Virus record (IMG/VR): IMGVR_UViG_3300021137_000001
Location: 62,001 to 126,000 of that record
Length of the DNA: 64,000 bases
Reading direction: 5' to 3' (one strand)
Shown: piece by piece, positions 1,908 through 61,356 of the stretch
Layout: each line of letters starts with the position of its first letter
How positions within the stretch are numbered: position 1 is the first letter of the stretch
Translations under genes and position numbers: made by a program
The notes under the pieces: model-generated
Seen by the model: the letters and a program-made list of their open reading frames with translations, nothing else
Told to the model about the DNA's origin: nothing
Database searches by the model: none

Positions 1908-2621
1908 GTGATGCAACTATTTTTATATACCTTAATCGTAACACACATTACAATAGTGTGTGTTACGCTTTATCTACACCGTTGCCAAAGTCATAAAGGT
2001 GTTGAGTTCCATCCGGGGCTCGCACACTTTATGCGTTTTTGGTTGTGGATGACTACTGGTATGACTACTAAACAATGGGTAGCAGTACATCGCAAACATC
2101 ATCAATCGACTGACATTATCGGTGATCCACATAGTCCTCATATCTTTGGTATTATGACTGTTATGTTTACTGGTATGTTACTATATAATAACACTTGTAA
2201 AGATGCAACCTTTGTTATGAAATATGGTAAAGGTACACCCAAGGATTGGATCGAGCGTAAATTATACACAGCATATCCGAGACTTGGTCTATTACTAATG
2301 TTACTAATAGATTTAATATTATTTGGTCCTGTGGGTTTGGCAATATGGATTATACAAATATTATGGATACCTGTTGGTGCAGCTGCATTAATTAATGGAT
2401 TGGGTCATTGGGTCGGGTACCGCAATGGTGAAACTAACGATTACAGTCGTAACATTAGTCCAATTGGAATTATTGTAGCTGGCGAAGAATTACATAACAA
2501 TCATCACTTAAATCCAGCAAGTCCAAAGTTTAGTCGTAAGCCTTGGGAATTTGACATAGGCTGGATGTACATTACAATATTTAGATTTTTAGGTTTAGCA
2601 ACACTTAATCAAATCTCTTGA
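1908..2621 (+). CDS. Membrane fatty-acid (delta-9 type) desaturase
   Basis: Three His boxes HRCQSH, HRKHH, HNNHH; hydrophobic segments; C-terminal WEFDIGW. Confidence 0.9.
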   Translation: MMQLFLYTLIVTHITIVCVTLYLHRCQSHKGVEFHPGLAHFMRFWLWMTTGMTTKQWVAVHRKHHQSTDIIGDPHSPHIFGIMTVMFTGMLLYNNTCKDATFVMKYGKGTPKDWIERKLYTAYPRLGLLLMLLIDLILFGPVGLAIWIIQILWIPVGAAALINGLGHWVGYRNGETNDYSRNISPIGIIVAGEELHNNHHLNPASPKFSRKPWEFDIGWMYITIFRFLGLATLNQIS

Positions 2622-2646
2622 CTTAACCTGACAATTAGCATATAAT
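2618..2646 (+). promoter_or_regulatory. Sigma70-type promoter upstream of the primase locus
   Basis: TTGACT-N17-TATAAT. Confidence 0.75.
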
Positions 2647-2653
2647 ATAGTAT

Positions 2654-2710
2654 ATGCTGAATCTTATCTCCAACTATGTAAAAAATTGTTTCAATTGTAA
2701 GTTGACATAA
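2654..2710 (+). pseudogene. Orphan 5' remnant of primase (MLNLISNYVKNCFNCKLT*)
   Basis: MLNLISNY resembles the primase start MINQISDY at 3377; lies directly after the promoter and before the endonuclease. Confidence 0.55.
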
Positions 2711-2718
2711 ATACTTGT

Positions 2719-3396
2719 ATGGAAAAATACATTTATCTTATCACTTCACCATCATTGAAAGTTTACGTAGGTCAGTCAATGATATCAATCGAGAAAAAAA
2801 TTCATTCTTATCGAAAATCGGAAAGGTATGTTAATAAATTAACAGGCCGTAAGATTATTAACGCCATCAGAAAATATGGATGGGATAATATGAAGTTTGA
2901 GATAATTGAGTTGTCGGCTGAATGGACAAAAGCAACACTAAATGAACGAGAAATTTTTTGGATAGCATATTATGATTCAGTAAATATTGGATATAATATG
3001 ACAATTGGCGGAGACGGAGTTGATTCTAAATTAGCTGTACAGTTAGCAACAACACATCATGCAACGATGAGTGCAGAAAAGAAACAACAACGTAGAGATA
3101 ATTGTAGTAAAGGTCAGCTTATTCGATTCGAAAATACTCCAGAGTCTGTGCAAACTAAACAAAGAAAAAGTAATTCTCATAAAGGGATATACCTAATAGA
3201 GGCACCCGATGGCAGAACTTGGGAAACTAATATAGGATTAAAAGAGTTTGCTGAACAATACGGCACAGAATTGGATATTACTTATTGGCAGTTGTTTGGT
3301 GCTTATAGAAAATGTTATAATAATAGAATAGTAACTCGCAATAGAATAGATAATAATAAATGGAAGGTCACGCGAATTGATAAATCAGATATCTGA
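2719..3396 (+). mobile_element. Free-standing GIY-YIG homing endonuclease
   Basis: YIYLI...VYVGQS, REIFWI, GYNMTIGGDG; ATAAATA just upstream. Confidence 0.85.
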
Positions 3397-4372
3397 TTAC
3401 ACTATTGCTCTTTGGAAATCAAGAAAAACTAAAAGTAGTTCTGCTGGATGGATTTCTGGAAATGCGCCTTGTTGCATACACAATGGCGAAAGCGCAGATA
3501 CACGCGGCCGAGGTGGATTGATATACGCCGACAATAAATTAACTTGGCATTGCTTTAACTGTTCCTACAAAGCATCATACATACCGGGTCGCCCATTAAC
3601 ATTTAAGTTTCGTAAACTACTTGGTTGGCTAGGTGCAAGTGATGGTGAAGTTAAGCGTTTAGTAATCGAAGCAATTCGCATTAAAGACTTAGTTGGCCCA
3701 ACAGAACATAAAGAAGAAGTTAAAGAAGAGATTGTAATTAAGGCACGTACATTGCCCGATAACATACAATCATTCACTGAACTAACTACCTTACACCCAG
3801 CCGCAGAATATTGTTACGATAGAAAAATCGACTTAACAAAGTATAACTTTTATGTAACTGAAAGTAAACAACACTCATTATATAAACGTGTAATCATTCC
3901 GTGCTACTGGAAGAACAATGTAATTGGCTATACAGCACGTGCTTTTACCGATGATGTTAAGCCAAAGTATCATAACAACTACGAATCAAATTTTGTGTTT
4001 AACACAGACCAACAGCAACGTGATTGGAAGTTTGTTATTGTATGCGAAGGCCCATTTGACGCAATGGCAATAGATGGTGTTGCAGTATTAGGTAATGACA
4101 TTAGTGAAATACAAGCGGATATTATAGATAGCTTGGGTCGAGAAGTTATTGTTGTTGCTGATACTGATGTTAGTGGTGCTAAAACAATAGATGCGGCAAT
4201 TAAGTATGGCTGGAGTGTAAGTTTCCCGATCTGGCAAGAAGATGCTGACTGTAAAGATATCAGCGCAGCAGTAGTCAAGTACGGCAAACTGTTTGTGCTT
4301 AAAAGCATTATTGATGCTAAAGAAACGAGCAAATTAAAAATAGAATTACTACGAAAAAGAATGTATAATTAA
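3377..4372 (+). CDS. DNA primase (T4 gp61-like; Zn finger + TOPRIM)
   Basis: CC...HCFNC zinc motif, CEGPFDAM, DTD and KD TOPRIM motifs; upstream of helicase. Confidence 0.9.
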   Translation: MINQISDYTIALWKSRKTKSSSAGWISGNAPCCIHNGESADTRGRGGLIYADNKLTWHCFNCSYKASYIPGRPLTFKFRKLLGWLGASDGEVKRLVIEAIRIKDLVGPTEHKEEVKEEIVIKARTLPDNIQSFTELTTLHPAAEYCYDRKIDLTKYNFYVTESKQHSLYKRVIIPCYWKNNVIGYTARAFTDDVKPKYHNNYESNFVFNTDQQQRDWKFVIVCEGPFDAMAIDGVAVLGNDISEIQADIIDSLGREVIVVADTDVSGAKTIDAAIKYGWSVSFPIWQEDADCKDISAAVVKYGKLFVLKSIIDAKETSKLKIELLRKRMYN

Positions 4373-14529: not shown

Positions 14530-15117
14530 ATGAAAAACAAATACGGTATTATTAAAGCATGCTTATATTGTAAGAATGAGTTTGAAACTAAACCTCGTTT
14601 TTTAGAATATTGTTCTCAATCCTGTAAGAATCCTAATAACAGAGCAGGACATACGCCATGGAACAAAGGTGCTAAATTTACAGCGGAACAAAAAGCTAAA
14701 CAAAATACAAGTGGGCTTAAAAAAGGGTGGGGTTGGAATAAAGGTATTCCAAACGAAGCACAAAAACAAAAATGGACAGGCGAAGGTAACCCAAATTGGG
14801 ATGGTAAAGTTAATAATCAACGTCCTAAAAATTATGTAGATGATGAGTTTACTGCATATAAAAGAGAATGTAAGAAAGCAACATATCGTTCTTGGTATGC
14901 CATGAAGAAGGAAGGATTAGTGCCTGTATTAGGCAAAAGAAAAACAGATTGGCAAATGGATCATATTATTCCATTCAAACAAGGATTTGAATTAGGAATA
15001 GATCCTGCGATAATTGGTAGTAGAAAGAATTTAAGATTTATATTAGGTGAAGAAAATAGAAGTAAGTGGGATAAGTTTCAATCGGAAGATATAGTTAAAT
15101 CTATAATAGGAGAATAA
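14530..15117 (+). mobile_element. HNH homing endonuclease with Zn finger
   Basis: CLYC..YCSQSC, PWNKG repeats, MDHIIP...NLRFI...EN. Confidence 0.8.
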
Positions 15118-15118
15118 C

Positions 15119-15235
15119 ATGGCATATTCAGCAGCCGTTTTGGACCATTATGAAAATCCAAGAAATGTGGGATCTTTAGACAAGGAGAATGCGCAAGTTG
15201 GGACCGGAATCGTCGGTGCCCCAGCTTGCGGATGA
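15119..15235 (+). CDS. iscU: IscU N-terminal fragment (MAYSAAVLDHYENPRNVG...GAPACG*), missed by the ORF track
   Basis: AGGAG SD; canonical IscU start; in-frame TGA at 15233 right after Cys-Gly. Confidence 0.85.
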   Translation: MAYSAAVLDHYENPRNVGSLDKENAQVGTGIVGAPACG

Positions 15236-15510
15236 CAGGTGACGTCATGAAGTTACAAATTCAAGTCGAAGACGGTATTATAATTGATGCAAAGTTTAAA
15301 ACTTACGGATGCGGAAGTGCGATTGCTAGTTCGAGCCTCGTCACTGAACTGCTTAAGGGCATGTCGCTTGACCAAGCTCAAGAGATTAAGAATAGCGAGA
15401 TTGCTGAAGAACTTGCGTTACCGCCGGTAAAGATACACTGCAGCGTCCTGGCCGAGGACAGCATCCGTGCTGCAATAGCAGATTACAAAAAGAAAAATAA
15501 TCTAACATAG
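15232..15510 (+). CDS. iscU: IscU C-terminal fragment (MTGDVMKLQI...LPPVKIHC)
   Basis: GDVMKL, FKTYGCGSAIASSS, LPPVKIHCS; its ATG overlaps the upstream TGA (ATGA). Confidence 0.85.
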   Translation: MTGDVMKLQIQVEDGIIIDAKFKTYGCGSAIASSSLVTELLKGMSLDQAQEIKNSEIAEELALPPVKIHCSVLAEDSIRAAIADYKKKNNLT

Positions 15511-15536: not shown

Positions 15537-16295
15537 ATGAATAACCTTTGCCTATGCGGATGCGGTGTAAAATTAAGAAAAGATAATAGAACAGGTTATC
15601 AAAAAGGACACAAACCTTGTCCTATTTGCGGCACACTAGTAAAAGGATCGGGATTAGAATGTTGCTCCAAAGCATGTTCTGCCAAATTACATTGGCAACG
15701 ACATCCTGAAATGAAAGAAACCCGAAGTTGGAATGCCGCAAGAAACGCTGTTCGTGAATTGCACAGAGATAGTTGGCTTAAGAATTTATCTAATGCTTGT
15801 ATAGGAAGAAGTCCTTGGAACAAAGGCACAAAAAGTATGCAAGTGCCTTGGAACAAAGATCTACCCGCAGCACAACAACCTAGATTTAATGTTAAAAGTC
15901 CCGACGGGTGGTATGAAAAATATAAGAAGACTAATCTAAAAAAATACGGAGTAGAAAATCCAGGTATATTAGCCAAATCGTCACCGAGAAGCAAAAAAGA
16001 AAAGTTGTTAGAACAGTATTTGATTGATTATAAAATTAATCAGAGAATAGGGAATAACAAGCCAGACTATGTTAATGAAGATACTAAACATATAATTGAA
16101 GTTTATGGAGATTATTGGCATTGTAACCCGACCACATTTACAGCAGATTTCTACCATTCACAACTTAAAATGACCGCTAAAGAAAAATGGCAAAAAGATT
16201 TAGTTAGAAAGACAGAATTAGAATCCTTGGGATATACAGTTACTATTGTATGGGAAGGTGAATTAAAAGAGTTTATTAAAGGATTACAAAAATGA
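15537..16295 (+). mobile_element. Vsr/DUF559-like PD-(D/E)XK endonuclease with Zn fingers
   Basis: CLCGC, PWNK repeats, PDY...IIEVYGDYWH, GYTVTIVWE. Confidence 0.8.
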
Positions 16296-16615
16296 TTAGT
16301 TTAACTGAATTAGCCGCAGAGAAGATTAAGAAAAGCATTGATGCACGTGCTACAACAACGCTGGGTATTAAAGTTGGAGTTAAGACTGCTGGATGTAGTG
16401 GTATGAGTTATGTGCTTGAGTTTGTTGAACAACTAACAGCAGACGATATTGAATACAAATGTCACGGAGTTAGCATATTTACAACACCAAAAGACTTAGT
16501 CTACGTAGATGGTTTGCGTATGGACTGGCAACGTCAAGGACTTAACGAAGGCTTTGAGTTTATTAATCCAAATGAAGCAGGTAAATGTGGTTGCGGTGAG
16601 AGTTTTACAGTATGA
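16292..16615 (+). CDS. iscA: Iron-sulfur cluster assembly protein IscA
   Basis: GCSGMSY, FINPN, CGCGESF. Confidence 0.95.
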   Translation: MISLTELAAEKIKKSIDARATTTLGIKVGVKTAGCSGMSYVLEFVEQLTADDIEYKCHGVSIFTTPKDLVYVDGLRMDWQRQGLNEGFEFINPNEAGKCGCGESFTV

Positions 16616-17004: not shown

Positions 17005-17688
17005 ATGCTTATACAAAAATATGATTACACCCCCATTTCACGTCAATCCGTAGATGGAAAACGTCTTTACAGTTTGCCAGATGGCAGTAAAGTTCCTTCA
17101 GTAACAACAATTCTCGACAAGACAAAGTCCGCAGAAAGTAAAGCGGCACTTGATAATTGGCGAAAAGCTGTTGGTGAGAAAAAAGCCCAAGAGATTACTA
17201 CAGAAGCCGCCAACCGCGGAACACGTATGCACAAATGGTTGGAAGACTATGTGCGCAACAATCGTGACATGGGCGAGCCCGGCACTAACCCCTACAGTAT
17301 GCAAAGTCATAAGATGGCGCAGATAATTGTAGAACAGGGTTTAGCAAATGTAGATGAAATATGGGGCATCGAAGTGCCATTATACGTAGAAGGTCTGTAT
17401 GCTGGTACAACTGACGCTTGTGGCGTACACAAGGGCAAACCAGCCATTTTAGACTACAAACAGACCAATAAACCAAAGAAAACGGAGTGGGTTCAGGACT
17501 ATTTCCTCCAGTTATGTGCTTATGGACTAGCACACAACGAAACACACGGAACCGACATTAAACAAGGTGTTATTCTGATGTGCAGTCAGGACTTCCAATA
17601 TCAAACGTGGACAGTCGAAGGCGAAGAATGGGATATGTGGACAGAAAAATGGCTTCAGAGAGTGGAACAGTATTATAATCTTAGCTAA
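17005..17688 (+). CDS. PD-(D/E)XK exonuclease (Cas4/RecB-like)
   Basis: PSVTTIL, RGTRMH, AGTTD, ILDYKQ, QLCAY. Confidence 0.85.
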   Translation: MLIQKYDYTPISRQSVDGKRLYSLPDGSKVPSVTTILDKTKSAESKAALDNWRKAVGEKKAQEITTEAANRGTRMHKWLEDYVRNNRDMGEPGTNPYSMQSHKMAQIIVEQGLANVDEIWGIEVPLYVEGLYAGTTDACGVHKGKPAILDYKQTNKPKKTEWVQDYFLQLCAYGLAHNETHGTDIKQGVILMCSQDFQYQTWTVEGEEWDMWTEKWLQRVEQYYNLS

Positions 17689-55293: not shown

Positions 55294-55369
55294 GGGTCGA
55301 TAACTCACTCGGCGAGAGTACTGTGCTCATAACGCAGAAGGCAGGGATCATAACCCTGGCGACCCACCA
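55294..55369 (+). tRNA. tRNA-Met/Ile2 (CAT) with atypical T-loop
   Basis: Cloverleaf, loop CTCATAA, CCA; T-loop ATCATAA. Confidence 0.75.
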
Positions 55370-55374
55370 ACAAA

Positions 55375-55452
55375 GCGTCCGTAGCTCATCTGGACTAGAG
55401 CATGGGATTTCTACTCCCAGGGTAGCTGGTTCGAATCCAGCCGGGCGCACCA
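55375..55452 (+). tRNA. tRNA-Arg (TCT)
   Basis: TGGGA-TTTCTAC-TCCCA, GGTTCGAATCC, CCA. Confidence 0.92.
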
Positions 55453-55473
55453 CTTTTTATATAAGGAAACACA

Positions 55474-55665
55474 ATGAGAACAAAGTCAGAATTTGATATT
55501 GCAATGGAAGAATTTTTAGCCAACGGTGGCGAAGTAAAACAAATAGCACGTGGCGTACAAAGTGAAACAGCAACAACAAACTTCTGGGGCGCACCAAAGA
55601 AAAAAGCCGCAGTAGAAGCAGTAAATGAGTTAGGCGCAACAGGTATTGACGTAATAGAAGAATAA
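55474..55665 (+). CDS. Small hypothetical protein
   Basis: AAGGA SD; EEFLANGGEVKQI motif. Confidence 0.65.
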   Translation: MRTKSEFDIAMEEFLANGGEVKQIARGVQSETATTNFWGAPKKKAAVEAVNELGATGIDVIEE

Positions 55666-55722
55666 TAATATCAGTTCAAAAATAAAATATAAATATATTA
55701 GTAATAATGGAGGTAACTCGAC

Positions 55723-56370
55723 TTGCACAATCCTGTAGAAAAACCAACTTGGTTATATAAACCTATCGATGATATCCCTGAATTGAATAAAATTCAAAAG
55801 GAATGTTTTCGAATCTATTCGGCTGTAAAGAAAGATATATGCAAAGATGTTGGCTGGGCCATTGCTGGAATAGAATTAGATATAATGAAAAAACTTGCAC
55901 CAAATTATATTAATTTTTTAAAAAAATTAGGGTTATACGAGATTTATGCCGGTACAGCATTTTCTGCTAGTATAGGGATACAAAAATATCCTTGTCCTGT
56001 ACACGTTGATTGTAAAGACTGGCGCCAATTACCATTTTCACTTAATATACCAGTTGTTGGATGTGAGGATAGTTATACTGTTTTTTATGATGTTGATGAA
56101 TCATCCGATCCTGCAAACGCATTACCAGATACATGGGATAATAATTATATGAAAATGAATAAAATTGAAGGAGTGGTCGGATATTCCGAAAAAACAGCAA
56201 AAGAAATTGGCAGAATGCCTGCTACCCAACCTGCATTTGTAAACATTGGTATTCCTCACCGCCCTGTGACAAATCATACTAATCTAAGATTAGTTATGTT
56301 ATCGAGATTTACACCTGACATATTTGATTATGTAAATAATGACATATTTAAAACTAAATTATCAGAATAA
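55723..56370 (+). CDS. Putative 2OG-Fe(II)/cupin-like protein
   Basis: HVD...SLNIP...H pattern. Confidence 0.5.
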   Translation: MHNPVEKPTWLYKPIDDIPELNKIQKECFRIYSAVKKDICKDVGWAIAGIELDIMKKLAPNYINFLKKLGLYEIYAGTAFSASIGIQKYPCPVHVDCKDWRQLPFSLNIPVVGCEDSYTVFYDVDESSDPANALPDTWDNNYMKMNKIEGVVGYSEKTAKEIGRMPATQPAFVNIGIPHRPVTNHTNLRLVMLSRFTPDIFDYVNNDIFKTKLSE

Positions 56371-56411
56371 TACCAGTTCAAAAATAAATGATAAATAATT
56401 AGATAAAGTGC

Positions 56412-56440
56412 TTGACAAGAGTATAAATAGAATATATAAT
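56412..56440 (+). promoter_or_regulatory. Promoter of the tRNA array (sigma70 with nested late box)
   Basis: TTGACA-N17-TATAAT with TATAAATA inside the spacer. Confidence 0.85.
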
Positions 56441-56474
56441 AGTTGTATAAGTTAATAAGGAAGTGAGAAAACAA

Positions 56475-56600
56475 ATGTTCAAATCGTTACATCAGTTTAA
56501 GATATCAACACTCGTGCAGTTATGCGGCGTGTCTTCTTATTGGTCAGCGATTGAGATGAATACGAGTGATCGCGCACCGAATAGAAAGGGTTTAAGTTAA
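56475..56600 (+). CDS. Putative attenuator leader peptide (41 aa, all 20 amino acids)
   Basis: MFKSLHQFKISTLVQLCGVSSYWSAIEMNTSDRAPNRKGLS*; last codons form the antiterminator 5' arm. Confidence 0.65.
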   Translation: MFKSLHQFKISTLVQLCGVSSYWSAIEMNTSDRAPNRKGLS

Positions 56601-56661
56601 CGTTTATTATTATATATGAATTTTTACTTAAACCTTAGAATTAAAAACTCTAAGGTTTTTT
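56587..56661 (+). terminator. Antiterminator/terminator switch ahead of the tRNA array
   Basis: 56587-56597 pairs with 56626-56636; alternative terminator CCTTAGA/TCTAAGG plus T6. Confidence 0.75.
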
Positions 56662-56775
56662 GCTTTTAGCAGTAAGTGTTTTGGAAACGAGGTCCATAAC
56701 TAAACACTATAAAGATTGTAAGTTGAACGGGCGGAACTAGGGATGAAGCACCTTGTGTGGTGTGAAAAATCTAGC

Positions 56776-56856
56776 ATAATAAAGTACATTAATCGGCAAC
56801 TAGGTCCCACGCAATGTGGATTATGTCAGAGGCGAGTAATTAGTGTGCTTTATTAT
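56776..56856 (+). ncRNA. Long-stem small RNA unit 1
   Basis: 18-bp closing stem with two G-U pairs. Confidence 0.5.
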
Positions 56857-56900
56857 ACGCATTCACATGAGTGCGGTACACAATTTGTAGTGCATTTTGT

Positions 56901-56975
56901 CAGGGTATAGCTCAGCCTGGCCAGAGTCCTCGGTTTGGAACCGAGTTGTCGTAAGTTCGAATCTTACTACCCTGA
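56901..56975 (+). tRNA. tRNA-Pro (TGG), no encoded CCA
   Basis: CTCGG-TTTGGAA-CCGAG; acceptor stem extended by a flanking inverted repeat. Confidence 0.88.
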
Positions 56976-57080
56976 CAAAATGCATTACTTAAAAAGAGGT
57001 TAACACATACGGTAATTGGTAGTATAATAGCTACTTGAAGTTAAGTAATACGCTCTTTAACAGTTTGGAAGTTTTACAAT

Positions 57081-57153
57081 ATCGCATTCATCTAGTGGCC
57101 TAAGATACTGCCCTTTCACGGCAGGTACACGGATTCGAATTCCGTATGCGATA
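57081..57153 (+). tRNA. tRNA-Glu (TTC), no encoded CCA
   Basis: CTGCC-CTTTCAC-GGCAG; ATCGCAT/ATGCGAT acceptor. Confidence 0.88.
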
Positions 57154-57182
57154 CACATAGTAAATTTTGTATAAATACAAGT

Positions 57183-57794
57183 ATGACATATTACTACTTG
57201 TATCAAATCACTAATTTAGTGAATGCAAAAATTTACGTTGGAGTACATAAAACGAAATCATTAGATGACGGATATATGGGCTCTGGAAAAATTATTCAAT
57301 GTGCAATTAAAAAACACGGAATTGATAATTTTAAAAAAGACATACTTGAGACTTTTGACACATCAGAAGCTATGTATGCACGTGAGAAAGAAATAGTAAC
57401 AGATCAGTTTCTGTTACGCGAAGATACCTATAACTTACGTAGAGGCGGAACTGGCGGATTTGATTATATAAACAAGCAACCATGGGTGCATACTACAAAC
57501 AGGATAATAGGAGATATAAAGAAAAGTAAAACATTAAAAGGTAGACGCCCTTCTGAAAATACGTTAATAGCAGTAAGGTTAATGCATCAAGACGGAAGAG
57601 TAAAGTATGATACGTTTACTGGTAAACAGCATACCATCGAAACTAAACAAAAAATGTCAATTGCGAAAAAAGGAAAAGGATGCAATCAGCATAACAGTCA
57701 ATTCGGTACTATATGGATAACGGATGGTATAAGTAACAAAAAAATAAAGAAAGATGTTACTATTCCAGAAGGATGGAATAGAGGTAGAAGTTAA
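57183..57794 (+). mobile_element. GIY-YIG (SegB-like) homing endonuclease in the tRNA array
   Basis: YLYQITN...IYVGVH, YMGSG, YNLRRGG. Confidence 0.88.
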
Positions 57795-57798
57795 GACC

Positions 57799-57904
57799 AT
57801 ATTAAAACATATTTGACCAAGTCGGTGTTCCTTGATGCTAGGATTAGAGCGGACAGCAGTCCGCGAGATGTAGTTGCGATATTACAGCAAGTGTGTTTTA
57901 ATAT
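57799..57904 (+). ncRNA. Long-stem small RNA unit 2
   Basis: 17-bp closing stem with G-U pairs; internal GCGGAC/GTCCGC hairpin. Confidence 0.5.
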
Positions 57905-57915
57905 AGTAAGTCTAT

Positions 57916-57989
57916 TGGCTCATGGTGTAGTGGTAGCACAACAGGTTTTGATCCTGTTAGTTGTAGTTCGATTCTACATGGGCCTGCCA
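57916..57989 (+). tRNA. tRNA-Gln (TTG)
   Basis: ACAGG-TTTTGAT-CCTGT, CCA. Confidence 0.9.
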
Positions 57990-58058
57990 AGTTTTAATGG
58001 AGTGGAAATACCATACTATCAGTCCGTTATGTATAAATACATATATAGGAGAACTGAT

Positions 58059-58457
58059 ATGTTTAAGAACAGTAAGAAACAAGGTGACGCTGGATTAGGG
58101 CAAGCAATAGCATATTTTACAATGAAAGGATATGATGTTGCGTTGCCACTAACAGATAGCGCAGACTGGGATATGATTGTTGAGATAGATGGTGAACTTA
58201 AAAGAGTCCAAGTTAAAACATCTAAACAACTATCTAAAACGGGTATAATGATGTTTAATGCTAATGTAAATGGCGGCAACATGTCATTTAATAAAAAACC
58301 TAAACTTATACCAGAACAACAATGGGATTTATTGTTCTTACATCACTTAGTGACAAATAAGCAAGCATTGATTCCTAAAGAAGCACTAACTACAAAAGGT
58401 CAAGTGAACTTAGGTAGTAGTCAATGTAAGTATAAAGATTTTATGATTAATGGATGA
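58059..58457 (+). mobile_element. PD-(D/E)XK endonuclease (I-Ssp6803I-like family)
   Basis: KQGD..., WDMIVE..RVQVKT; AGGAG SD; stop overlaps tRNA-Tyr. Confidence 0.75.
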
Positions 58458-58537
58458 GCGGCGCAGTTGGAGAGGCGCGGGAGACTGTAAATCTCTTTTC
58501 CCTGAATGAGTAGGTTCGAATCTTACCTCATCCACCA
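58452..58537 (+). tRNA. tRNA-Tyr (GTA)
   Basis: GGAGA-CTGTAAA-TCTCT, long variable arm, CCA. Confidence 0.9.
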
Positions 58538-58542
58538 ATTTA

Positions 58543-58619
58543 GTTGTGTCGTCGGTTCGAAGCCAACCTGTAATCAAGCGAAATAGCAGTTACAGTAGTT
58601 TACTTGGTAAAACAACAAC
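58543..58619 (+). ncRNA. Circularly permuted, anticodon-less tRNA-like element
   Basis: T-arm and 3' acceptor strand precede the 5' acceptor strand and D-arm; ends pair GTTGT/ACAAC. Confidence 0.65.
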
Positions 58620-58651
58620 AATTTTTGTAGTAAATTTAATAGGAGCAACAC

Positions 58652-58672
58652 ATGAAGCGAGTTAAACTTTAG
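58652..58672 (+). CDS. Mini-ORF MKRVKL* upstream of tRNA-Lys
   Basis: AGGAG SD 6 nt before ATG; AAG and AAA codons. Confidence 0.65.
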   Translation: MKRVKL

Positions 58673-58743
58673 TGTCGTCTTTAATCCCATTGTACTGTAT
58701 TAAAGGTAACGGCACGTTAAATCTTTAATACAGTACAATGGGA
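58672..58743 (+). promoter_or_regulatory. Two-state RNA switch overlapping the tRNA-Lys 5' end
   Basis: Perfect 21-bp inverted repeat 58685-58705/58723-58743 versus alternative 58672-58685/58699-58715. Confidence 0.7.
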
Positions 58744-58815
58744 GTATGGTGAAATTGGTTATCACATGGGACTTTTAATCCTTCGTTCAGAGTTCAAGTC
58801 TCTGTGCTCCTACCA
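58740..58815 (+). tRNA. tRNA-Lys (TTT)
   Basis: Loop CTTTTAA; weak anticodon stem TGGGA/TCCTT; CCA. Confidence 0.85.
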
Positions 58816-58922
58816 TAAGAAAGTACATTGCTAACGCCTCTGAGAAGGGTTCCGGTAGTCCTGTATCAATTAATAGCTAAGTCAGCAGATGGGTTCGCTG
58901 AATGTAGTGTACTTCCTTATGG
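58813..58922 (+). ncRNA. Long-stem small RNA unit 3
   Basis: About 18-bp closing stem beginning at the tRNA-Lys CCA. Confidence 0.5.
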
Positions 58923-58929
58923 TTTCAAT

Positions 58930-59004
58930 GTTGTTTATAGTGTAGCGATAACACCCCATCCTGTGAAGATGGTATCACGAGTTTGAACCTCGTTAGACAA
59001 CCCA
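58930..59004 (+). tRNA. tRNA-His (GTG)
   Basis: G-1:C73, CCATC-CTGTGAA-GATGG, CCA. Confidence 0.88.
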
Positions 59005-59062
59005 ACTTTTAATATGGCTTCCGTCCGTAGAATACTGCTTGCAGTCGGCCCGGAAGTTCTTT

Positions 59063-59137
59063 GGCCGATTCGTATAATGATCATTACACGGGATTGTCTA
59101 TCCTGCTATGAGAGTTTGATTCTCTCATCGGTCGCCA
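59063..59137 (+). tRNA. tRNA-Asp (GTC)
   Basis: CGGGA-TTGTCTA-TCCTG, G73, CCA. Confidence 0.88.
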
Positions 59138-59200
59138 AGTTTTAAAATAATAGTTGACAGTGTGTATTAGAACTGTTACACTATGTAGATAGTAACAAAT

Positions 59201-59329
59201 AAGTATTTGGAAGAAAGTCGCAACTTAATGTATTCGTGGGAAGGAGAGTGCGACATCCCGTCCGAAAGAGTAGGTGATGCTACGGTGTAACTCCGTCATT
59301 TGAATTACTGTATGATTCTGCACATACTT
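59201..59329 (+). ncRNA. Candidate structured RNA after an internal promoter
   Basis: AAGTAT/ATACTT closure, GTCGCA/TGCGAC, possible GGGA/TCCC pseudoknot, ACGG/CCGT hairpin. Confidence 0.4.
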
Positions 59330-59360
59330 AACAGGCATGTATTTGCCGCAGAACTTATAT

Positions 59361-59435
59361 CGCGGAGTGGGGAAGTGGCAACCCGGAAGGCTCATAACCT
59401 TTAGATCGGCAGTTCGAATCTGTCCTCCGCAACCA
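59361..59435 (+). tRNA. Initiator tRNA-fMet (CAT)
   Basis: C1xA72 mismatch, CTCATAA loop, CCA. Confidence 0.88.
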
Positions 59436-59440
59436 GTAAT

Positions 59441-59515
59441 GCCGCCTTAGCTCATTTGGTAGAGCAACGCACTTGTAATGCGTAGGCGCCCAGTTCGAAC
59501 CCGGGAGGCGGACCA
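59441..59515 (+). tRNA. tRNA-Thr (TGT), acceptor 3' strand one nt short
   Basis: ACGCA-CTTGTAA-TGCGT; ends AGGCGGACCA. Confidence 0.8.
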
Positions 59516-59523
59516 ATTTTAAT

Positions 59524-59597
59524 GCGGCTATGATGTAATGGTAACCTAAAACTTTGCCAAAGTTTAATCGCGAGTTCGATTCTCGCTAGCCGCTCCA
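59524..59597 (+). tRNA. tRNA-Gly (GCC)
   Basis: AAACT-TTGCCAA-AGTTT, U73, CCA. Confidence 0.9.
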
Positions 59598-59661
59598 AAT
59601 TTTGCTTGACAAAATGTCAAAACGAATGTATAATACACTTAATTAAAAAAAGGAGGCTGAC

Positions 59662-60054
59662 ATGTACTACGATGAAGTAAAGTTTGAAGAATTAAAAGGT
59701 AAGGTATTAGTTAGTGCAACAGTCTCTGACTATAAAGATGAAATGAAGTTTGTAACAACAGACGGCGAAATATATACTTTGTATCACGCACAAGATTGTT
59801 GTGAATCAGTGGAAATTGAATCTATCGTTGGTGACTTAGCTGATTTAGTTGGCGAAGAAATCTTAATGGCAGAAGAAGCACAAAACTTATTTGACTTGAT
59901 TAAATCTGCAGGAGTCGAAGAAGAAGATGAATACGGTTCACACACTTGGACATTTTACAAACTAGCAACTCGCAAAGGGTACGTTGACATCAGATGGTAT
60001 GGTTCGAGCAACGGGTACTATTCAGAGGAAGTTTCTTTTAAAAGAGAGAAATAA
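59662..60054 (+). CDS. Conserved phage hypothetical protein
   Basis: HAQDCCESV, WTFYKL, SNGYYSE; sigma70 promoter and AGGAGG SD. Confidence 0.75.
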   Translation: MYYDEVKFEELKGKVLVSATVSDYKDEMKFVTTDGEIYTLYHAQDCCESVEIESIVGDLADLVGEEILMAEEAQNLFDLIKSAGVEEEDEYGSHTWTFYKLATRKGYVDIRWYGSSNGYYSEEVSFKREK

Positions 60055-60055
60055 T

Positions 60056-60217
60056 ATGACTTCTAAAAAACCACAGTGGGTTAAAGATAAAGAAGCACTG
60101 CAAACTGCGCCCCCAGAGACAATTATTATAATTGGCAAAATGGGCGCAGATGGTGTTATTAACGGTCGGCTACCGAGCGGTGAAATCTATCATCGCAATA
60201 AAAGGCAACATAGATAA
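60056..60217 (+). CDS. Hypothetical protein
   Basis: Short ORF in operon. Confidence 0.5.
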   Translation: MTSKKPQWVKDKEALQTAPPETIIIIGKMGADGVINGRLPSGEIYHRNKRQHR

Positions 60218-60588
60218 TGGACTTTACAATTGACCCAGAGTACTTAACAAGTGTAACTATTCGCGATGAGTGGAACACGTATACACGTAATGGTCGTGTA
60301 CCTACAGCAGAAGAACTTATTTTAATTATTCAAGGCAAGGGTGAGTGCTCGACTACTAGTTCAGCCGACCACCCAGAGTTTGCTAAGTTACGTGAGGAAC
60401 TAGGTTTGCTACGTTATATTCATATACAGCGTAGTTGGTGGAATGGCGATAGTGTATTAAAACCATTCACACTTAACGGAAGAAAGTTTAAGGTAGGAGC
60501 ACAGTTTAGCAGTGGTAGTGCAATGGGTACACACCTTATTGTACGTGCTAAACACCCAGAATATTATAAGGATGAATATGATGATTAA
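60217..60588 (+). CDS. Hypothetical protein
   Basis: Coupled ORF. Confidence 0.65.
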   Translation: MDFTIDPEYLTSVTIRDEWNTYTRNGRVPTAEELILIIQGKGECSTTSSADHPEFAKLREELGLLRYIHIQRSWWNGDSVLKPFTLNGRKFKVGAQFSSGSAMGTHLIVRAKHPEYYKDEYDD

Positions 60589-61066
60589 ACCATGGATTGA
60601 AAACGTTAGTATGAAAGACGTACAAGTAGGCGAGCACTTTGATGCTGGCACTAACTCTATGCTTATTCAAATCGTTGACCCTATTACTCTTTTTCCAACA
60701 CCAAAGTTTGCATTTAAAGAAGTGCATCAGTTTAAGTTTTTAGATGCAGAAGATACTGACGTTGCAGAGTACGGCGAAGAGCCATTGATTAGCGATCAGC
60801 AAGCAGAAGCAATTTTACAGTTGCTACAACGTGCGCTAGCCGACAATATGAACATTGTTGTACATTGTCACGCTGGTTTATGTCGTAGTGGTGCAGTAGT
60901 AGAAATTGGTGTTATGATGGGCTTTAGAGATACTGAAAAGTTTCGCAGTCCTAACCTACGTGTTAAACACAAACTAATGAAATTGCTTGGGCTAACACAT
61001 AACCCAGATGAGCAACACAACTGGCGTGATGATTATAGACATCACTTAACTAAAAGCAATATGTAA
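60578..61066 (+). CDS. Protein-tyrosine/dual-specificity phosphatase-like protein
   Basis: VHCHAGLCRS (CX5R). Confidence 0.85.
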   Translation: MMIKPWIENVSMKDVQVGEHFDAGTNSMLIQIVDPITLFPTPKFAFKEVHQFKFLDAEDTDVAEYGEEPLISDQQAEAILQLLQRALADNMNIVVHCHAGLCRSGAVVEIGVMMGFRDTEKFRSPNLRVKHKLMKLLGLTHNPDEQHNWRDDYRHHLTKSNM

Positions 61067-61077
61067 AGGAGTAGTAC

Positions 61078-61272
61078 ATGATTAAGTTATCCCCAACGGG
61101 TAAGATATCCAAAAATGCTAACAAAGAACTTTGTCTTAACACCGAGTTCAAAGTTAGCATTGATGTACGTAATGTAACGTACGATAACATTGATGAAAAG
61201 ATTGCTGAGCTTATTGCAGAGGCACACAAAGTCAAACAAGTACTCGAACAAAACATAGTAACATCAAATTAA
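61078..61272 (+). CDS. Hypothetical protein
   Basis: AAGGAG SD. Confidence 0.6.
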   Translation: MIKLSPTGKISKNANKELCLNTEFKVSIDVRNVTYDNIDEKIAELIAEAHKVKQVLEQNIVTSN

Positions 61273-61280
61273 AAGAATAC

Positions 61281-61356
61281 GCAACCTTAGCTCATCTGGT
61301 AGAGCACCTGCTTGAAGCGCAGGGTGTGTTTGGTTCAAGTCCAAGAGGTTGCACCA
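61281..61356 (+). tRNA. tRNA-Phe (GAA)
   Basis: CCTGC-TTGAAGC-GCAGG, CCA. Confidence 0.9.

What the first reader, a model, noticed from the sequence alone, without database searches (positions are those of the whole stretch)
15119..15510. iscU split at its first Fe-S ligand by an 8-nt insert that creates an ATGA stop/start
Seen: ...GCT TGC GGA TGA CA GGT GAC GTC ATG... Removing 8 nt restores the conserved GAPACGDVM. The insert makes a TGA overlapped by an in-frame ATG for the rest of the protein, and also flanks the stop with Gly codons GGA and GGT. Both halves are otherwise intact and the gene lies between two endonucleases. Known: Aeh1 nrdA works as two polypeptides split by mobE, and T4 gene 60 is read by GGA-to-GGA bypass. 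Inference: a minimal insert that destroys the neighbouring HNH target site while function is kept by fragment complementation or a short ribosomal hop.
Basis: partly seen in the sequence, partly recalled or inferred. Interest (0 to 1): 0.72.

Follow-up and report, generated by a model that had tools for sequence, protein, structure and literature searches.

The report
Mobile HNH cassette with mini-bypass in iscU
A jumbo freshwater phage carries an Fe-S scaffold gene (iscU) interrupted at its first cysteine ligand by an 8-base, stop-containing gap; the gap belongs to a widespread mobile endonuclease cassette and is probably skipped by the ribosome hopping from one glycine codon to the next, a miniature of the T4 gene 60 bypass.

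Summary
iscU is broken at 15230-15240 (GGA TGA CA GGT), and removing 8 nt restores GAPACGDVM. It is not an assembly error or a unique lesion: three independent freshwater runs reproduce it, and about 67 viral and about 60 metagenome contigs carry an insert at exactly this codon.

Twenty insert forms of 4-10 nt share one architecture: a Gly codon, a slow A-site codon (TGA, TAG or TAA, once rare AGG), 0-4 nt, a Gly codon, then Asp-Val. The forms give all three frame relations.

The insert is tied to the upstream HNH-like ORF (31/40 insert-bearing versus 3/150 intact; p = 3e-24). HNH, iscU codons 1-38 and the insert move as one block, and identity breaks just after the insert.

Both halves keep all Fe-S ligands and look constrained. 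One lineage lost both candidate restart ATGs yet keeps Gly-stop-Gly.

Best reading: a homing-endonuclease cassette whose self-immunity insert is neutralised by a short Gly-to-Gly stop-hop. A two-piece IscU made by re-initiation is the main rival. Cleavage and translation remain untested. I rate it a new variant of the mobA/gene 60 kind, of high interest.

The parts
14530..15117 (+). HNH-like free-standing homing endonuclease ORF (195 aa): N-terminal CxxC...CxxxC zinc module, PWNKG (NUMOD3-like) repeats, C-terminal DH...N...N motif
   Evidence: Alignment A1 of 14 homologues has invariant C11 C14 C28 C32 D144 H145 N167 N176. Pfam HNH is sub-threshold in 6/14 members. The best fold matches are weak but are HNH nucleases: 4h9d at Z 4.1, T5 SciA and GVE2 HNH. 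A homologue sits between gp18 and gp19 in T4-like phages.
15119..15232 (+). iscU codons 1-38 (M...GAPACG), the part of iscU that travels with the HNH cassette; its last codon GGA (15230-15232) is the proposed take-off codon
   Evidence: NifU_N profile positions 1-35. Between loci this part is nearly identical together with the HNH while the 3' part of iscU is only 70-85% identical. pN/pS is 0.25 among insert-bearing genes.
15233..15237 (+). Non-coding gap TGACA: stop codon TGA in the weak TGA-C context plus 2 nt. With one Gly codon it makes up the 8-nt insert.
   Evidence: Across 20 forms the stop is TGA 12, TAG 6, TAA 1 and AGG 1. The +4 base is C in 11/17 forms, against 17% at the genome's own gene ends.
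15232..15234 (+). ATG overlapping the TGA (ATGA), in frame with the 3' part; a possible re-initiation start in this form only
   Evidence: it is in frame only in the ATGAC-NN 8-nt forms. It is out of frame or absent in the 4-, 6-, 7-, 9- and 10-nt forms.
15238..15240 (+). GGT, the proposed landing codon (Gly38)
   Evidence: A Gly codon follows the gap in all 20 insert forms and is always followed by GAY GTN.
15241..15510 (+). iscU codons 39-128 (DVMKLQ...), with ligands D39, C63, H105 and C106; stop TAG at 15508-15510
   Evidence: NifU_N profile positions 34-125, E=2.5e-35. All ligand residues are kept in 40/40 unique insert-bearing genes, apart from one sequence gapped at IHCS.
15537..16295 (+). 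Second free-standing endonuclease, Vsr/PD-(D/E)XK-like, with zinc module and PWNKG repeats; independent of the insert
   Evidence: Weak matches to Pfam Vsr/DUF559 and PDB 1vsr (E about 0.02) and to PHROG endonuclease / homing endonuclease families. It is present downstream of intact iscU in L076 and L081 and of insert-bearing L103.
16292..16615 (+). iscA/HesB-type Fe-S carrier gene, the usual downstream partner of phage iscU
   Evidence: PF01521, E=9e-17. It is found downstream of iscU in most related loci.

Best explanation
The HNH-like ORF (14530-15117), the first 38 codons of iscU and the short insert form one mobile homing-endonuclease cassette. The cassette spreads among freshwater phages by replacing the 5' end of resident iscU genes. 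The insert lies in the most conserved codons of iscU (ACG|DVM, between ligands Cys37 and Asp39). It is inferred to break the endonuclease's own target and so protect the carrier genome. An amino-acid insertion in that loop would probably be harmful, so the extra bases are kept untranslated. The peptidyl-tRNA-Gly on the take-off codon (GGA here) meets a slow A-site codon: a stop in a weak context, or rare AGG in one form. It un-pairs, the mRNA slips 4-13 nt (8 nt here), and the tRNA re-pairs with the next Gly codon (GGT here). Decoding resumes at Asp39 and yields normal full-length IscU. Shown here: recurrence of the insert, its linkage to the HNH, the cassette boundaries, and the constraint on both halves and on the Gly/stop/Gly architecture. 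Inferred: target-site immunity and the hop itself.
For: (1) The insert is real and recurrent. It is reproduced in three independent runs. It occurs in 5 of the 80 nearest viral iscU loci, 67 viral contigs and about 60 metagenome contigs. It occurs in none of the 185,579 prokaryote species genomes held.
(2) One architecture covers 20 forms of 4, 6, 7, 8, 9 and 10 nt: GGN + (TGA/TAG/TAA/AGG) + 0-4 nt + GGN + GAY GTN. The frame offset is +1, +2 or 0, and a codon-to-codon hop is the only single mechanism that fits all three.
(3) A scan that did not require Gly-Asp-Val found no iscU with an insert that had lost them. Variation in those 9 nt is confined to third codon positions.
(4) The stops are atypical for this genome's gene ends: TAA is 1/19 forms versus 63% of gene ends, +4 T is 1/17 versus 46%, and +4 C is 11/17 versus 17%. 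These are weak termination contexts, as at recoding sites. One form uses rare AGG, as some gene-60 homologues do.
(5) In the cassette tree, forms interconvert inside well-supported clades: 7 and 8 nt in the WIN/L061 clade, 9 and 7 nt in the L148/L085 clade. The 6-nt L246 is nested in an 8-nt clade. It has lost the ATGA start and has Met41 replaced by Leu, so its first in-frame start lies 36 codons downstream, beyond Cys63. Its gene and its HNH are nevertheless intact.
(6) Linkage to the HNH: 31/40 versus 3/150, p=3e-24.
(7) Mosaic structure: 15 of 18 insert-bearing pairs with at least 97% identical 5' parts have 3' parts at most 85% identical, against 0 of 13 intact pairs. [quoted passage not shown]
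(8) Function is retained: pN/pS is 0.25 (5' part) and 0.18 (3' part), all ligands are kept, and an in-frame intein persists in some insert-bearing genes.
Against: No protein or ribosome data exist, so the hop is inferred. Synthetic stop-hops are, from my memory of the original work, inefficient (about 1%; not checked in any paper read here), and no stimulatory RNA structure is conserved here. Take-off and landing codons match in wobble class in only 14/20 forms against 11.6 expected; in the window GGA to GGT needs a U:U wobble in the P site. GGAG/GGUGA formed by the Gly-Asp codons sits 4-5 nt before the Met41 ATG, an ideal re-initiation site. Conservation of Gly-Asp-Val and of the 3' part may be partly 'refreshed' by recombination with intact alleles during homing. 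The insert forms are phylogenetically related, so the context statistics overstate independence. L246 is a single contig. HNH identity rests on motifs and weak matches, and cleavage and immunity are untested. L006 carries the HNH with an intact iscU.
Confidence: 0.55

Rival explanations
1. Two-piece IscU. Translation stops after Gly38 and restarts close by, at the overlapping ATG (ATGA) in the window's form or at the conserved Met41 ATG in the others. The 38-aa fragment carrying Cys37 and the 87-92-aa fragment then assemble non-covalently, as split NrdA does in Aeh1. The cassette and immunity logic is the same as in the best explanation; only the way function is rescued differs.
For: The ATG at 15232 is in frame and overlaps the TGA. 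In every form except L246 the Met41 ATG lies 6 nt after the landing codon, preceded by GGAG, AGGUGA or GGUGAU at SD-like spacing. Termination followed by re-initiation is efficient and needs no special signals. The break lies in a loop between two strands, a typical permissive split site (general knowledge). Split genes made by Mob endonucleases are known.
Against: No single start codon serves all forms. The ATGA start is out of frame or absent in the 4-, 6-, 7-, 9- and 10-nt forms. A start at Met41 would drop Asp39 from both pieces, yet Gly-Asp-Val codons are retained in every insert-bearing gene, with only synonymous variation. L246 lacks both ATGs. In the AGG form the 0 frame runs 11 codons past Met41. 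The stops are in weak, not strong, termination contexts. The stop is always immediately after the Gly codon, which this model does not need.
Confidence: 0.28
2. Form-specific conventional recoding, giving IscU with 1-3 extra residues in the Cys37-Asp39 loop: +1 frameshift in the 4- and 7-nt forms, -1 or +2 shift in the 8-nt forms, and stop-codon readthrough or a suppressor tRNA in the 6- and 9-nt forms.
For: GGT AGG C resembles hungry-codon +1 sites, and TGA-C is the prfB shift context (general knowledge). Jumbo phages often carry tRNAs; this one has 13.
Against: It needs three or four unrelated mechanisms for sister lineages that interconvert by 1-2-nt indels. There are no slippery sequences: GGA to GAU, or GGA to CGG, gives no re-pairing. 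No suppressor tRNA was found. It does not explain why a Gly codon always follows the gap.
Confidence: 0.07
3. iscU is simply inactivated. The insert is a tolerated knock-out left by the selfish cassette, and the halves look intact only because insertions are recent or are constantly re-seeded by homing.
For: iscU is an accessory gene for a phage. The 3' part comes from the recipient allele, so its apparent purifying selection may pre-date insertion.
Against: The cassette lineages are deeply diverged (HNH about 58-84% identical; branch lengths 0.1-0.5). Even so, the 5' part that travels with the insert has pN/pS 0.25. No second lesion occurs in 40 unique genes. The insert persists after HNH loss in 9 unique genes. 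The exact Gly/stop/Gly design is kept through indels and substitutions.
Confidence: 0.08
4. Sequencing or assembly artefact.
For: None beyond the prior that 8-nt indels can be errors.
Against: Identical sequence in independent runs from different years and samples, and diverged copies in more than 120 contigs.
Confidence: 0.01

Closest known systems
Phage T4 mobA / gene 60 mobile element (HNH homing endonuclease plus 50-nt translational bypass cassette; Bonocora et al. 2011 as cited in, and Manning & Atkins, bioRxiv 10.1101/2022.08.31.505936)
   Same: An HNH ORF lies immediately upstream of the interrupted gene. The element carries its own copy of the gene segment up to the gap (homR there, iscU codons 1-38 here) and ends at or just after the landing codon. 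The gap sits in invariant codons at a metal-ligand site. The take-off codon is Gly, followed by a stop or, in some members, hungry AGG, with a Gly landing codon. The endonuclease is often degraded or lost while the gap stays, and Vsr-type endonucleases occur nearby.
   Different: The target gene differs (iscU, not topoisomerase II). The gap is 4-10 nt instead of 50 nt. There is no conserved take-off stem-loop and no evidence for a nascent-peptide signal. The gene is not additionally split into two ORFs with CTE/NTE tails. The wobble match of take-off and landing codons is not enforced. No detectable similarity to T4 gp60.1. The bypass is unproven here.
Synthetic 'stop-hops' in E. coli (Weiss et al. 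1987, as described in Atkins et al. 2016, PMC5009743)
   Same: Matched codons flank a stop codon, so that 9 nt specify one amino acid. The forms GGT TAG GGC (L289, L290) and GGT TGA GGA (L246) have exactly this layout. In both cases the event relies on a slow A-site codon.
   Different: Those were laboratory constructs, which from my memory work at low efficiency. The 2016 review states that no natural in-frame stop hop is known. Here the layout is natural, conserved, and extended to out-of-frame gaps.
Split nrdA of phage Aeh1 (mobE insertion) and other Mob-split genes
   Same: A homing endonuclease interrupts an essential-type enzyme gene, and function is kept in spite of the interruption.
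   Different: There the endonuclease gene itself lies inside the host gene, and the two polypeptides carry added tails. Here the endonuclease is outside the gene, only 4-10 nt interrupt it, and no tails are added.
Yeast mitochondrial byp elements (Magnusiomyces capitatus; cited in PMC5009743)
   Same: [quoted passage not shown]
   Different: Those are 27-55-nt mobile GC-clusters in mitochondria, with no linked endonuclease, and depend on mitochondrial decoding peculiarities.

Membership tests
IscU / NifU_N Fe-S scaffold (PF01592) | Profile match over the whole domain | tested here: met
   The N piece covers profile positions 1-35 and the C piece 34-125, both above the gathering score; the own-genome search agrees.
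IscU / NifU_N Fe-S scaffold (PF01592) | Ligand residues Cys37, Asp39, Cys63, His105, Cys106 | tested here: met
   All are present in the window and in 40/40 unique insert-bearing genes, apart from one sequence gapped at IHCS.
Homing-endonuclease + translational-bypass cassette (mobA/gene 60 type) | Endonuclease ORF adjacent to the interrupted gene and statistically linked to the gap | tested here: met
   HNH-like ORF upstream in 31/40 insert-bearing versus 3/150 intact genes, p=3e-24.
Homing-endonuclease + translational-bypass cassette (mobA/gene 60 type) | Element carries a replacement copy of the gene segment and ends at or just after the landing codon | tested here: met
   Sliding identity is about 99-100% through HNH, codons 1-38 and the insert, then drops to 70-85%. 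Of 18 insert-bearing pairs with near-identical 5' parts, 15 have a discordant 3' part, against 0 of 13 intact pairs.
Homing-endonuclease + translational-bypass cassette (mobA/gene 60 type) | Take-off and landing codons for the same amino acid, with a stop or hungry codon after take-off | tested here: met
   All 20 forms have GGN ... GGN with TGA, TAG, TAA or AGG directly after the first. The same-tRNA wobble match is only 14/20.
Homing-endonuclease + translational-bypass cassette (mobA/gene 60 type) | About 50-nt gap with take-off stem-loop, internal mini-SD and nascent-peptide stimulator | tested here: not met
   The gap is 4-10 nt. MFE z-scores are about 0 and there is no shared hairpin. The nascent-peptide signal was not tested.
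Homing-endonuclease + translational-bypass cassette (mobA/gene 60 type) | Endonuclease homologous to MobA | tested here: inconclusive
   hhalign of A1 against T4 gp60.1 (a MobA remnant) gives probability 0.2%, but T4 mobA is defective and fragmentary. Intact MobA was not compared.
Homing-endonuclease + translational-bypass cassette (mobA/gene 60 type) | Endonuclease cuts the gap-less allele; the gap protects | not testable with these tools
   Needs a cleavage assay.
Homing-endonuclease + translational-bypass cassette (mobA/gene 60 type) | One polypeptide made across the gap | not testable with these tools
   Needs western blot, mass spectrometry or a reporter.
HNH (His-Me finger) endonuclease, PF01844 | Catalytic DH...N...N motif on a beta-beta-alpha fold | tested here: inconclusive
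   D144 H145 N167 N176 are invariant in 14 homologues. Pfam HNH E=0.009-0.02, below the cut-off. Model pLDDT is 69. The top VIA hit is the HNH nicking endonuclease 4h9d at Z 4.1, with T5 SciA and GVE2 HNH in the top 16. Foldseek found nothing significant.
Translationally coupled split gene (ATGA stop/start overlap) | In-frame start codon overlapping the stop, conserved among relatives | tested here: not met
   Present in the window and other ATGAC-NN forms only. It is out of frame in ATGAC-GGA forms, absent in TAA/TAG/AGG forms, and lost in L246.
prfB-type programmed +1 frameshift | Slippery P-site codon that re-pairs at +1, with an SD 3 nt upstream | tested here: not met
   GGA to GAU or GGU to GUU gives no re-pairing, there is no SD upstream of take-off, and the frame offset varies between forms.

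The most novel reading that the evidence does not exclude
These phages carry the first natural family of minimal programmed translational hops ('stop-hops'). In 4-10-nt gaps, peptidyl-tRNA-Gly jumps from one Gly codon over a stop or hungry codon to the next Gly codon, in any frame and without the elaborate gene-60 signals. The device would have evolved independently of gene 60 as the immunity module of a different HNH homing cassette. That would make 'untranslated spacer plus hop' a general solution that selfish endonucleases use to invade invariant codons.
Probability: 0.5. Interest if true: 0.92.

Novelty: new variant of a known kind. Interest (0 to 1): 0.84.

Why it matters
Programmed bypassing in bacteria and phages has essentially one proven example, T4 gene 60 and its homologues, all in one topoisomerase gene. 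A major review notes that shorter natural counterparts were 'long presumed' to exist and that no natural in-frame stop hop is known (PMC5009743).

This locus offers a second, independent system with a natural allelic series: 20 gap forms, three frame relations, three stop codons and a hungry codon, with or without candidate restart codons. That series amounts to a ready-made mutagenesis panel for asking what the minimum requirements for ribosome hopping are.

It also shows a homing-endonuclease cassette of the mobA type in a different gene family. It makes iscU, a phage auxiliary Fe-S gene, a hot spot for three kinds of mobile element: the HNH cassette, an intein at Cys63 and a Vsr-like endonuclease.

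For annotation, such genes are currently called as two fragments or as pseudogenes.

Tried and rejected
- **Megablast against cultured phages.** No match for the locus. Only distant intact iscU genes were found in cultured phages.
- **Second viral scan, anchored on KFKTYGCG.** It was still useful for extra intact controls and for L246.
- **RNA structure.** There is no conserved or unusually stable hairpin around the gap. The AUGAC/GUCAU stem exists only in some forms, so a gene-60-like take-off stem-loop is rejected as a general feature.
- **Matched take-off and landing wobble.** Not significant: 14/20 forms against 11.6 expected.
- **Special phage tRNA.** ARAGORN finds 13 ordinary tRNAs, including tRNA-Gly(GCC). 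There is no suppressor and no expanded anticodon loop, so a dedicated tRNA is rejected as the explanation.
- **HNH identification by sequence against PDB.** No hit. Foldseek was not significant, with top rows being Cas9 chains at E>4. Only VIA gave weak HNH hits.
- **Homology to T4 MobA.** Not detected with the defective T4 copy.
- **Bacterial genomes.** No insert-bearing iscU; all 21 pattern hits were chance matches.
- **Literature.** No paper in the held library links iscU with bypassing or hopping in phages.
- **Complex prediction of the two fragments.** Not run. A good score would not discriminate, because co-variation comes from intact IscU.

Full report
**1. The observation**

The window is bases 62001-126000 of a 329,321-bp virus record with direct terminal repeats, a jumbo phage from a freshwater metagenome. 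At 15119 an ORF starts MAYSAAVLDHYENPRNVG... and ends ...GAPACG at GGA (15230-15232), followed by TGA (15233-15235). The rest of IscU (GDVMKLQ... to the stop at 15508-15510) continues from GGT (15238-15240) in the -1 frame. An in-frame ATG at 15232 overlaps the TGA. Pfam NifU_N matches profile positions 1-35 in the first piece and 34-125 in the second.

**2. Not an artefact and not unique**

Logan contigs of three independent freshwater runs (2012 and 2016) cover the junction with no differences. A contig from an RNA library of a related phage spans 15143-15311 without a gap, though DNA carry-over in that library cannot be excluded.

- Among the 80 viral-contig iscU loci most similar to the window's 3' piece, 75 are intact. 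Five carry an insert at exactly the same codon: three of 8 nt and two of 7 nt.
- A pattern scan that allowed any 4-30 nt between GCTTGCGG and GAYGTNATG found 67 viral contigs.
- The same pattern found about 60 iscU contigs in JGI metagenomes. It found none among the 185,579 prokaryote species genomes held, where all 21 hits were chance.
- No such gene was found in cultured phages.

**3. Anatomy of the insert family**

Twenty distinct forms were seen. By length they are:

| Insert length | Forms (take-off codon, A-site codon, spacer, landing codon) |
|---|---|
| 4 nt | GGT A GGC (0-frame A-site codon AGG) |
| 6 nt | GGT TGA GGA; GGT TAG GGC |
| 7 nt | GGA TGA C GGA; GGC TGA C GGC; GGC TGA G GGC; GGT TAA C GGA; GGT TAG A GGA; GGT TGA A GGC; GGT TAG T GGT; GGT TGA G GGC |
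| 8 nt | GGA TGA CA GGT (the window); GGA TGA CA GGC; GGA TGA CC GGA; GGA TGA CT GGA; GGC TGA CG GGC |
| 9 nt | GGG TAG CTT GGT; GGT TAG AAA GGC; GGT TAG CCT GGC |
| 10 nt | GGC TGA CCCA GGT |

The shared design is a Gly codon, then directly a stop codon (or rare AGG), then 0-4 nt, then a Gly codon, then Asp-Val.

The frame offset between the halves is +1, +2 or 0, depending on the form. No in-frame insert made only of sense codons was found, although the scans would have caught one. In ATGAC-GGA the ATG is out of frame, and the TAA, TAG and AGG forms have none.

**4. The insert belongs to a mobile HNH cassette**

The upstream ORF (14530-15117) has a four-Cys module, PWNKG repeats, and an invariant DH...N...N motif in 14 homologues. 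Pfam HNH is just below threshold. The AlphaFold model (pLDDT 69) finds the HNH nicking enzyme 4h9d as its best but weak match (Z 4.1), with two other phage HNH nucleases in the top 16. Distant homologues are free-standing ORFs between gp18 and gp19 of T4-like Acinetobacter and Klebsiella phages. I call it a probable HNH homing endonuclease.

The link between this ORF and the insert rests on three results:

- **Association.** Among 200 unique iscU genes, 31 of 40 insert-bearing ones have this ORF or a 3' remnant of it directly upstream. Only 3 of 150 intact ones do (Fisher p = 3e-24).
- **Block-wise identity.** Pairwise profiles show that HNH, iscU codons 1-38 and the insert are 99-100% identical between contigs whose iscU 3' parts are only 70-85% identical. 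The break falls 0-60 nt after the insert.
- **Discordant halves.** 15 of 18 insert-bearing pairs with at least 97% identical 5' parts have 3' parts at most 85% identical, against 0 of 13 such pairs among intact genes. For the 5' part the nearest neighbour of an insert-bearing gene is always another insert-bearing gene. For the 3' part it is often an intact gene.

This is the structure described for the MobA element: the endonuclease, an element-borne homologous replacement segment, and a gap, with the element ending at the landing codon. As there, the endonuclease is often degraded or lost while the gap stays.

The downstream ORF (15537-16295) is a Vsr-like endonuclease on weak evidence. It also occurs next to intact iscU genes (L076, L081), so it is a separate element.

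**5. Constraint**

- All 40 unique insert-bearing genes keep C37, G38, D39, V40 and C63. H105 and C106 are kept in 39, the remaining sequence being gapped at that motif. None has a second lesion.
- pN/pS is 0.25 for the 5' part and 0.18 for the 3' part, like the intact genes at 0.21 and 0.22. The 5' value is the more telling one, because that segment travels with the insert. The 3' part may reflect selection before invasion.
- The cassette tree (700 nt, 25 sequences) is deep, with branches of 0.1-0.5 substitutions per site, and well supported.
- The same 7-nt form GGT TAA C GGA occurs in four separated clades of that tree.
- Forms also change inside clades. L061 (7 nt) is sister to the window's clade (8 nt). 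L148 (9 nt) is sister to 7-nt TAA forms. L246 (6 nt) is nested among 8-nt ATGACT forms.

The gap therefore evolves by substitutions and 1-2-nt indels, but always within the Gly/stop/Gly design.

**6. How function is most likely kept**

A hop of peptidyl-tRNA-Gly from the first to the second Gly codon restores ACGDVM in all 20 forms, whatever the frame. The support is as follows:

- It is the only single mechanism that covers all the forms.
- The stop lies immediately after take-off in every form.
- The stops are atypical for gene ends. Against this genome's own gene ends (TAA 63%; +4 base T 46%, C 17%), the forms use TAA once in 19 and have +4 T once and C eleven times in 17. The forms are related, so these p-values are upper bounds on significance.
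- The AGG variant mirrors the hungry-codon variants of gene-60 homologues.
- A scan that did not demand Gly-Asp-Val found no insert-bearing iscU lacking them. Variation in those codons is synonymous only.
- L246 has lost the ATGA start and has Leu (CTT) for Met41. Its first in-frame start codon lies 36 codons downstream, beyond Cys63, yet the gene and its HNH are intact.
- In the AGG form, 0-frame ribosomes run 11 codons past Met41.

The evidence against the hop is this:

- There are no translation data.
- Laboratory stop-hops are, from my memory of the original work, inefficient.
- No conserved RNA structure was found.
- The wobble match of take-off and landing codons is not enforced (14/20 against 11.6 expected).
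- The Gly-Asp codons themselves form an SD-like GGAG or GGUGA 4-5 nt before the Met41 ATG, so re-initiation there is mechanistically easy.
- Recombination with intact alleles could keep refreshing the sequence after the gap.

I put the hop at about 0.55 and the two-piece protein at about 0.28. The rest is shared between form-specific frameshift or readthrough and a tolerated knock-out.

**7. Comparison with what is known**

The closest system is T4 mobA/gene 60 and its homologues (bioRxiv 10.1101/2022.08.31.505936).

- The same: cassette logic, Gly take-off and landing codons, a stop or AGG after take-off, and decay of the endonuclease.
- Different: the host gene, the gap length (4-10 nt against 50 nt), the lack of a stem-loop, the absence of added tails, and no detected homology to the T4 MobA remnant.

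The 6-nt forms have the layout of the synthetic 'stop-hops' of Weiss et al. 1987, as described in PMC5009743. That review states that shorter natural counterparts of gene 60 were long presumed and that no natural in-frame stop hop is known. Searches of the held literature found nothing on iscU and bypassing.

**8. Verdict**

- The ATGA coupling is incidental.
- The feature is a new variant of a known kind. If the hop is shown, it is the first natural family of minimal stop-hops.
- Cleavage, immunity and the protein product remain to be tested at the bench.

Noticed in passing
L124:about 2200-3560 (- strand) and L139:6594-7900; also metagenome loci L325, L336, L353: Some insert-bearing iscU genes (8-nt ATGACT form) also carry an in-frame intein of about 340 aa between Gly62 and Cys63, the second Fe-S ligand (KFKTYG|CLTSNAPVN...VGSHN|CGSAIASS). 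Its middle resembles the Vsr/PD-(D/E)XK-like endonuclease rather than a LAGLIDADG domain. iscU is therefore hit by mobile elements at two ligand cysteines.
   Followed up: partly
window 15537-16295: A free-standing Vsr-like endonuclease with zinc module and PWNKG repeats lies between iscU and iscA. Homologues (67-82% identical) sit at the same place next to intact iscU in L076 and L081 and next to insert-bearing L103, so it is a separate mobile element.
   Followed up: partly
L006:2298-3270: A member of the same HNH clade, nested among insert-bearing cassettes in the tree, sits upstream of an intact iscU. The codons just 5' of the site are heavily substituted (GLTGSPACGD instead of G-x-VGAPACGD). 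This could be immunity by substitution or secondary loss of the insert.
   Followed up: partly
window 55294-61356 (genome 117294-123356): A cluster of 13 tRNA genes, including tRNA-Gly(GCC) at window 59524-59597. There is no suppressor tRNA. The window's take-off codon is GGA, which that tRNA does not read.
   Followed up: partly
L286:2743-3369 (Acinetobacter phage Acj61) and L287:2689-3309 (Klebsiella phage phi1_146043): Distant homologues of the HNH-like ORF are free-standing genes between the tail sheath (gp18) and tail tube (gp19) genes of T4-like phages. They are mostly annotated as hypothetical.
   Followed up: partly
viral loci L085, L102, L108, L113, L114, L119, L125, L129 and others: The commonest insert form, GGT TAA C GGA, creates the palindrome GTTAAC. 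It is conserved unchanged across cassette clades whose HNH proteins are only about 60% identical. Why this exact sequence is kept is unexplained.
   Followed up: no
window 17005-17688: A PD-(D/E)XK nuclease-family ORF (PF12705, E=1e-5) lies downstream of iscA in the window, and similar ORFs (same conserved N-terminal motif) lie downstream of iscA in L035, L061, L064 and L007.
   Followed up: no
L093, L105, L110, L120, L122, L130, L134, L142: Insert-bearing loci that retain only the last 29-35 codons of the HNH ORF upstream of iscU. These are deletion remnants that show stepwise loss of the endonuclease with the insert retained.
   Followed up: partly
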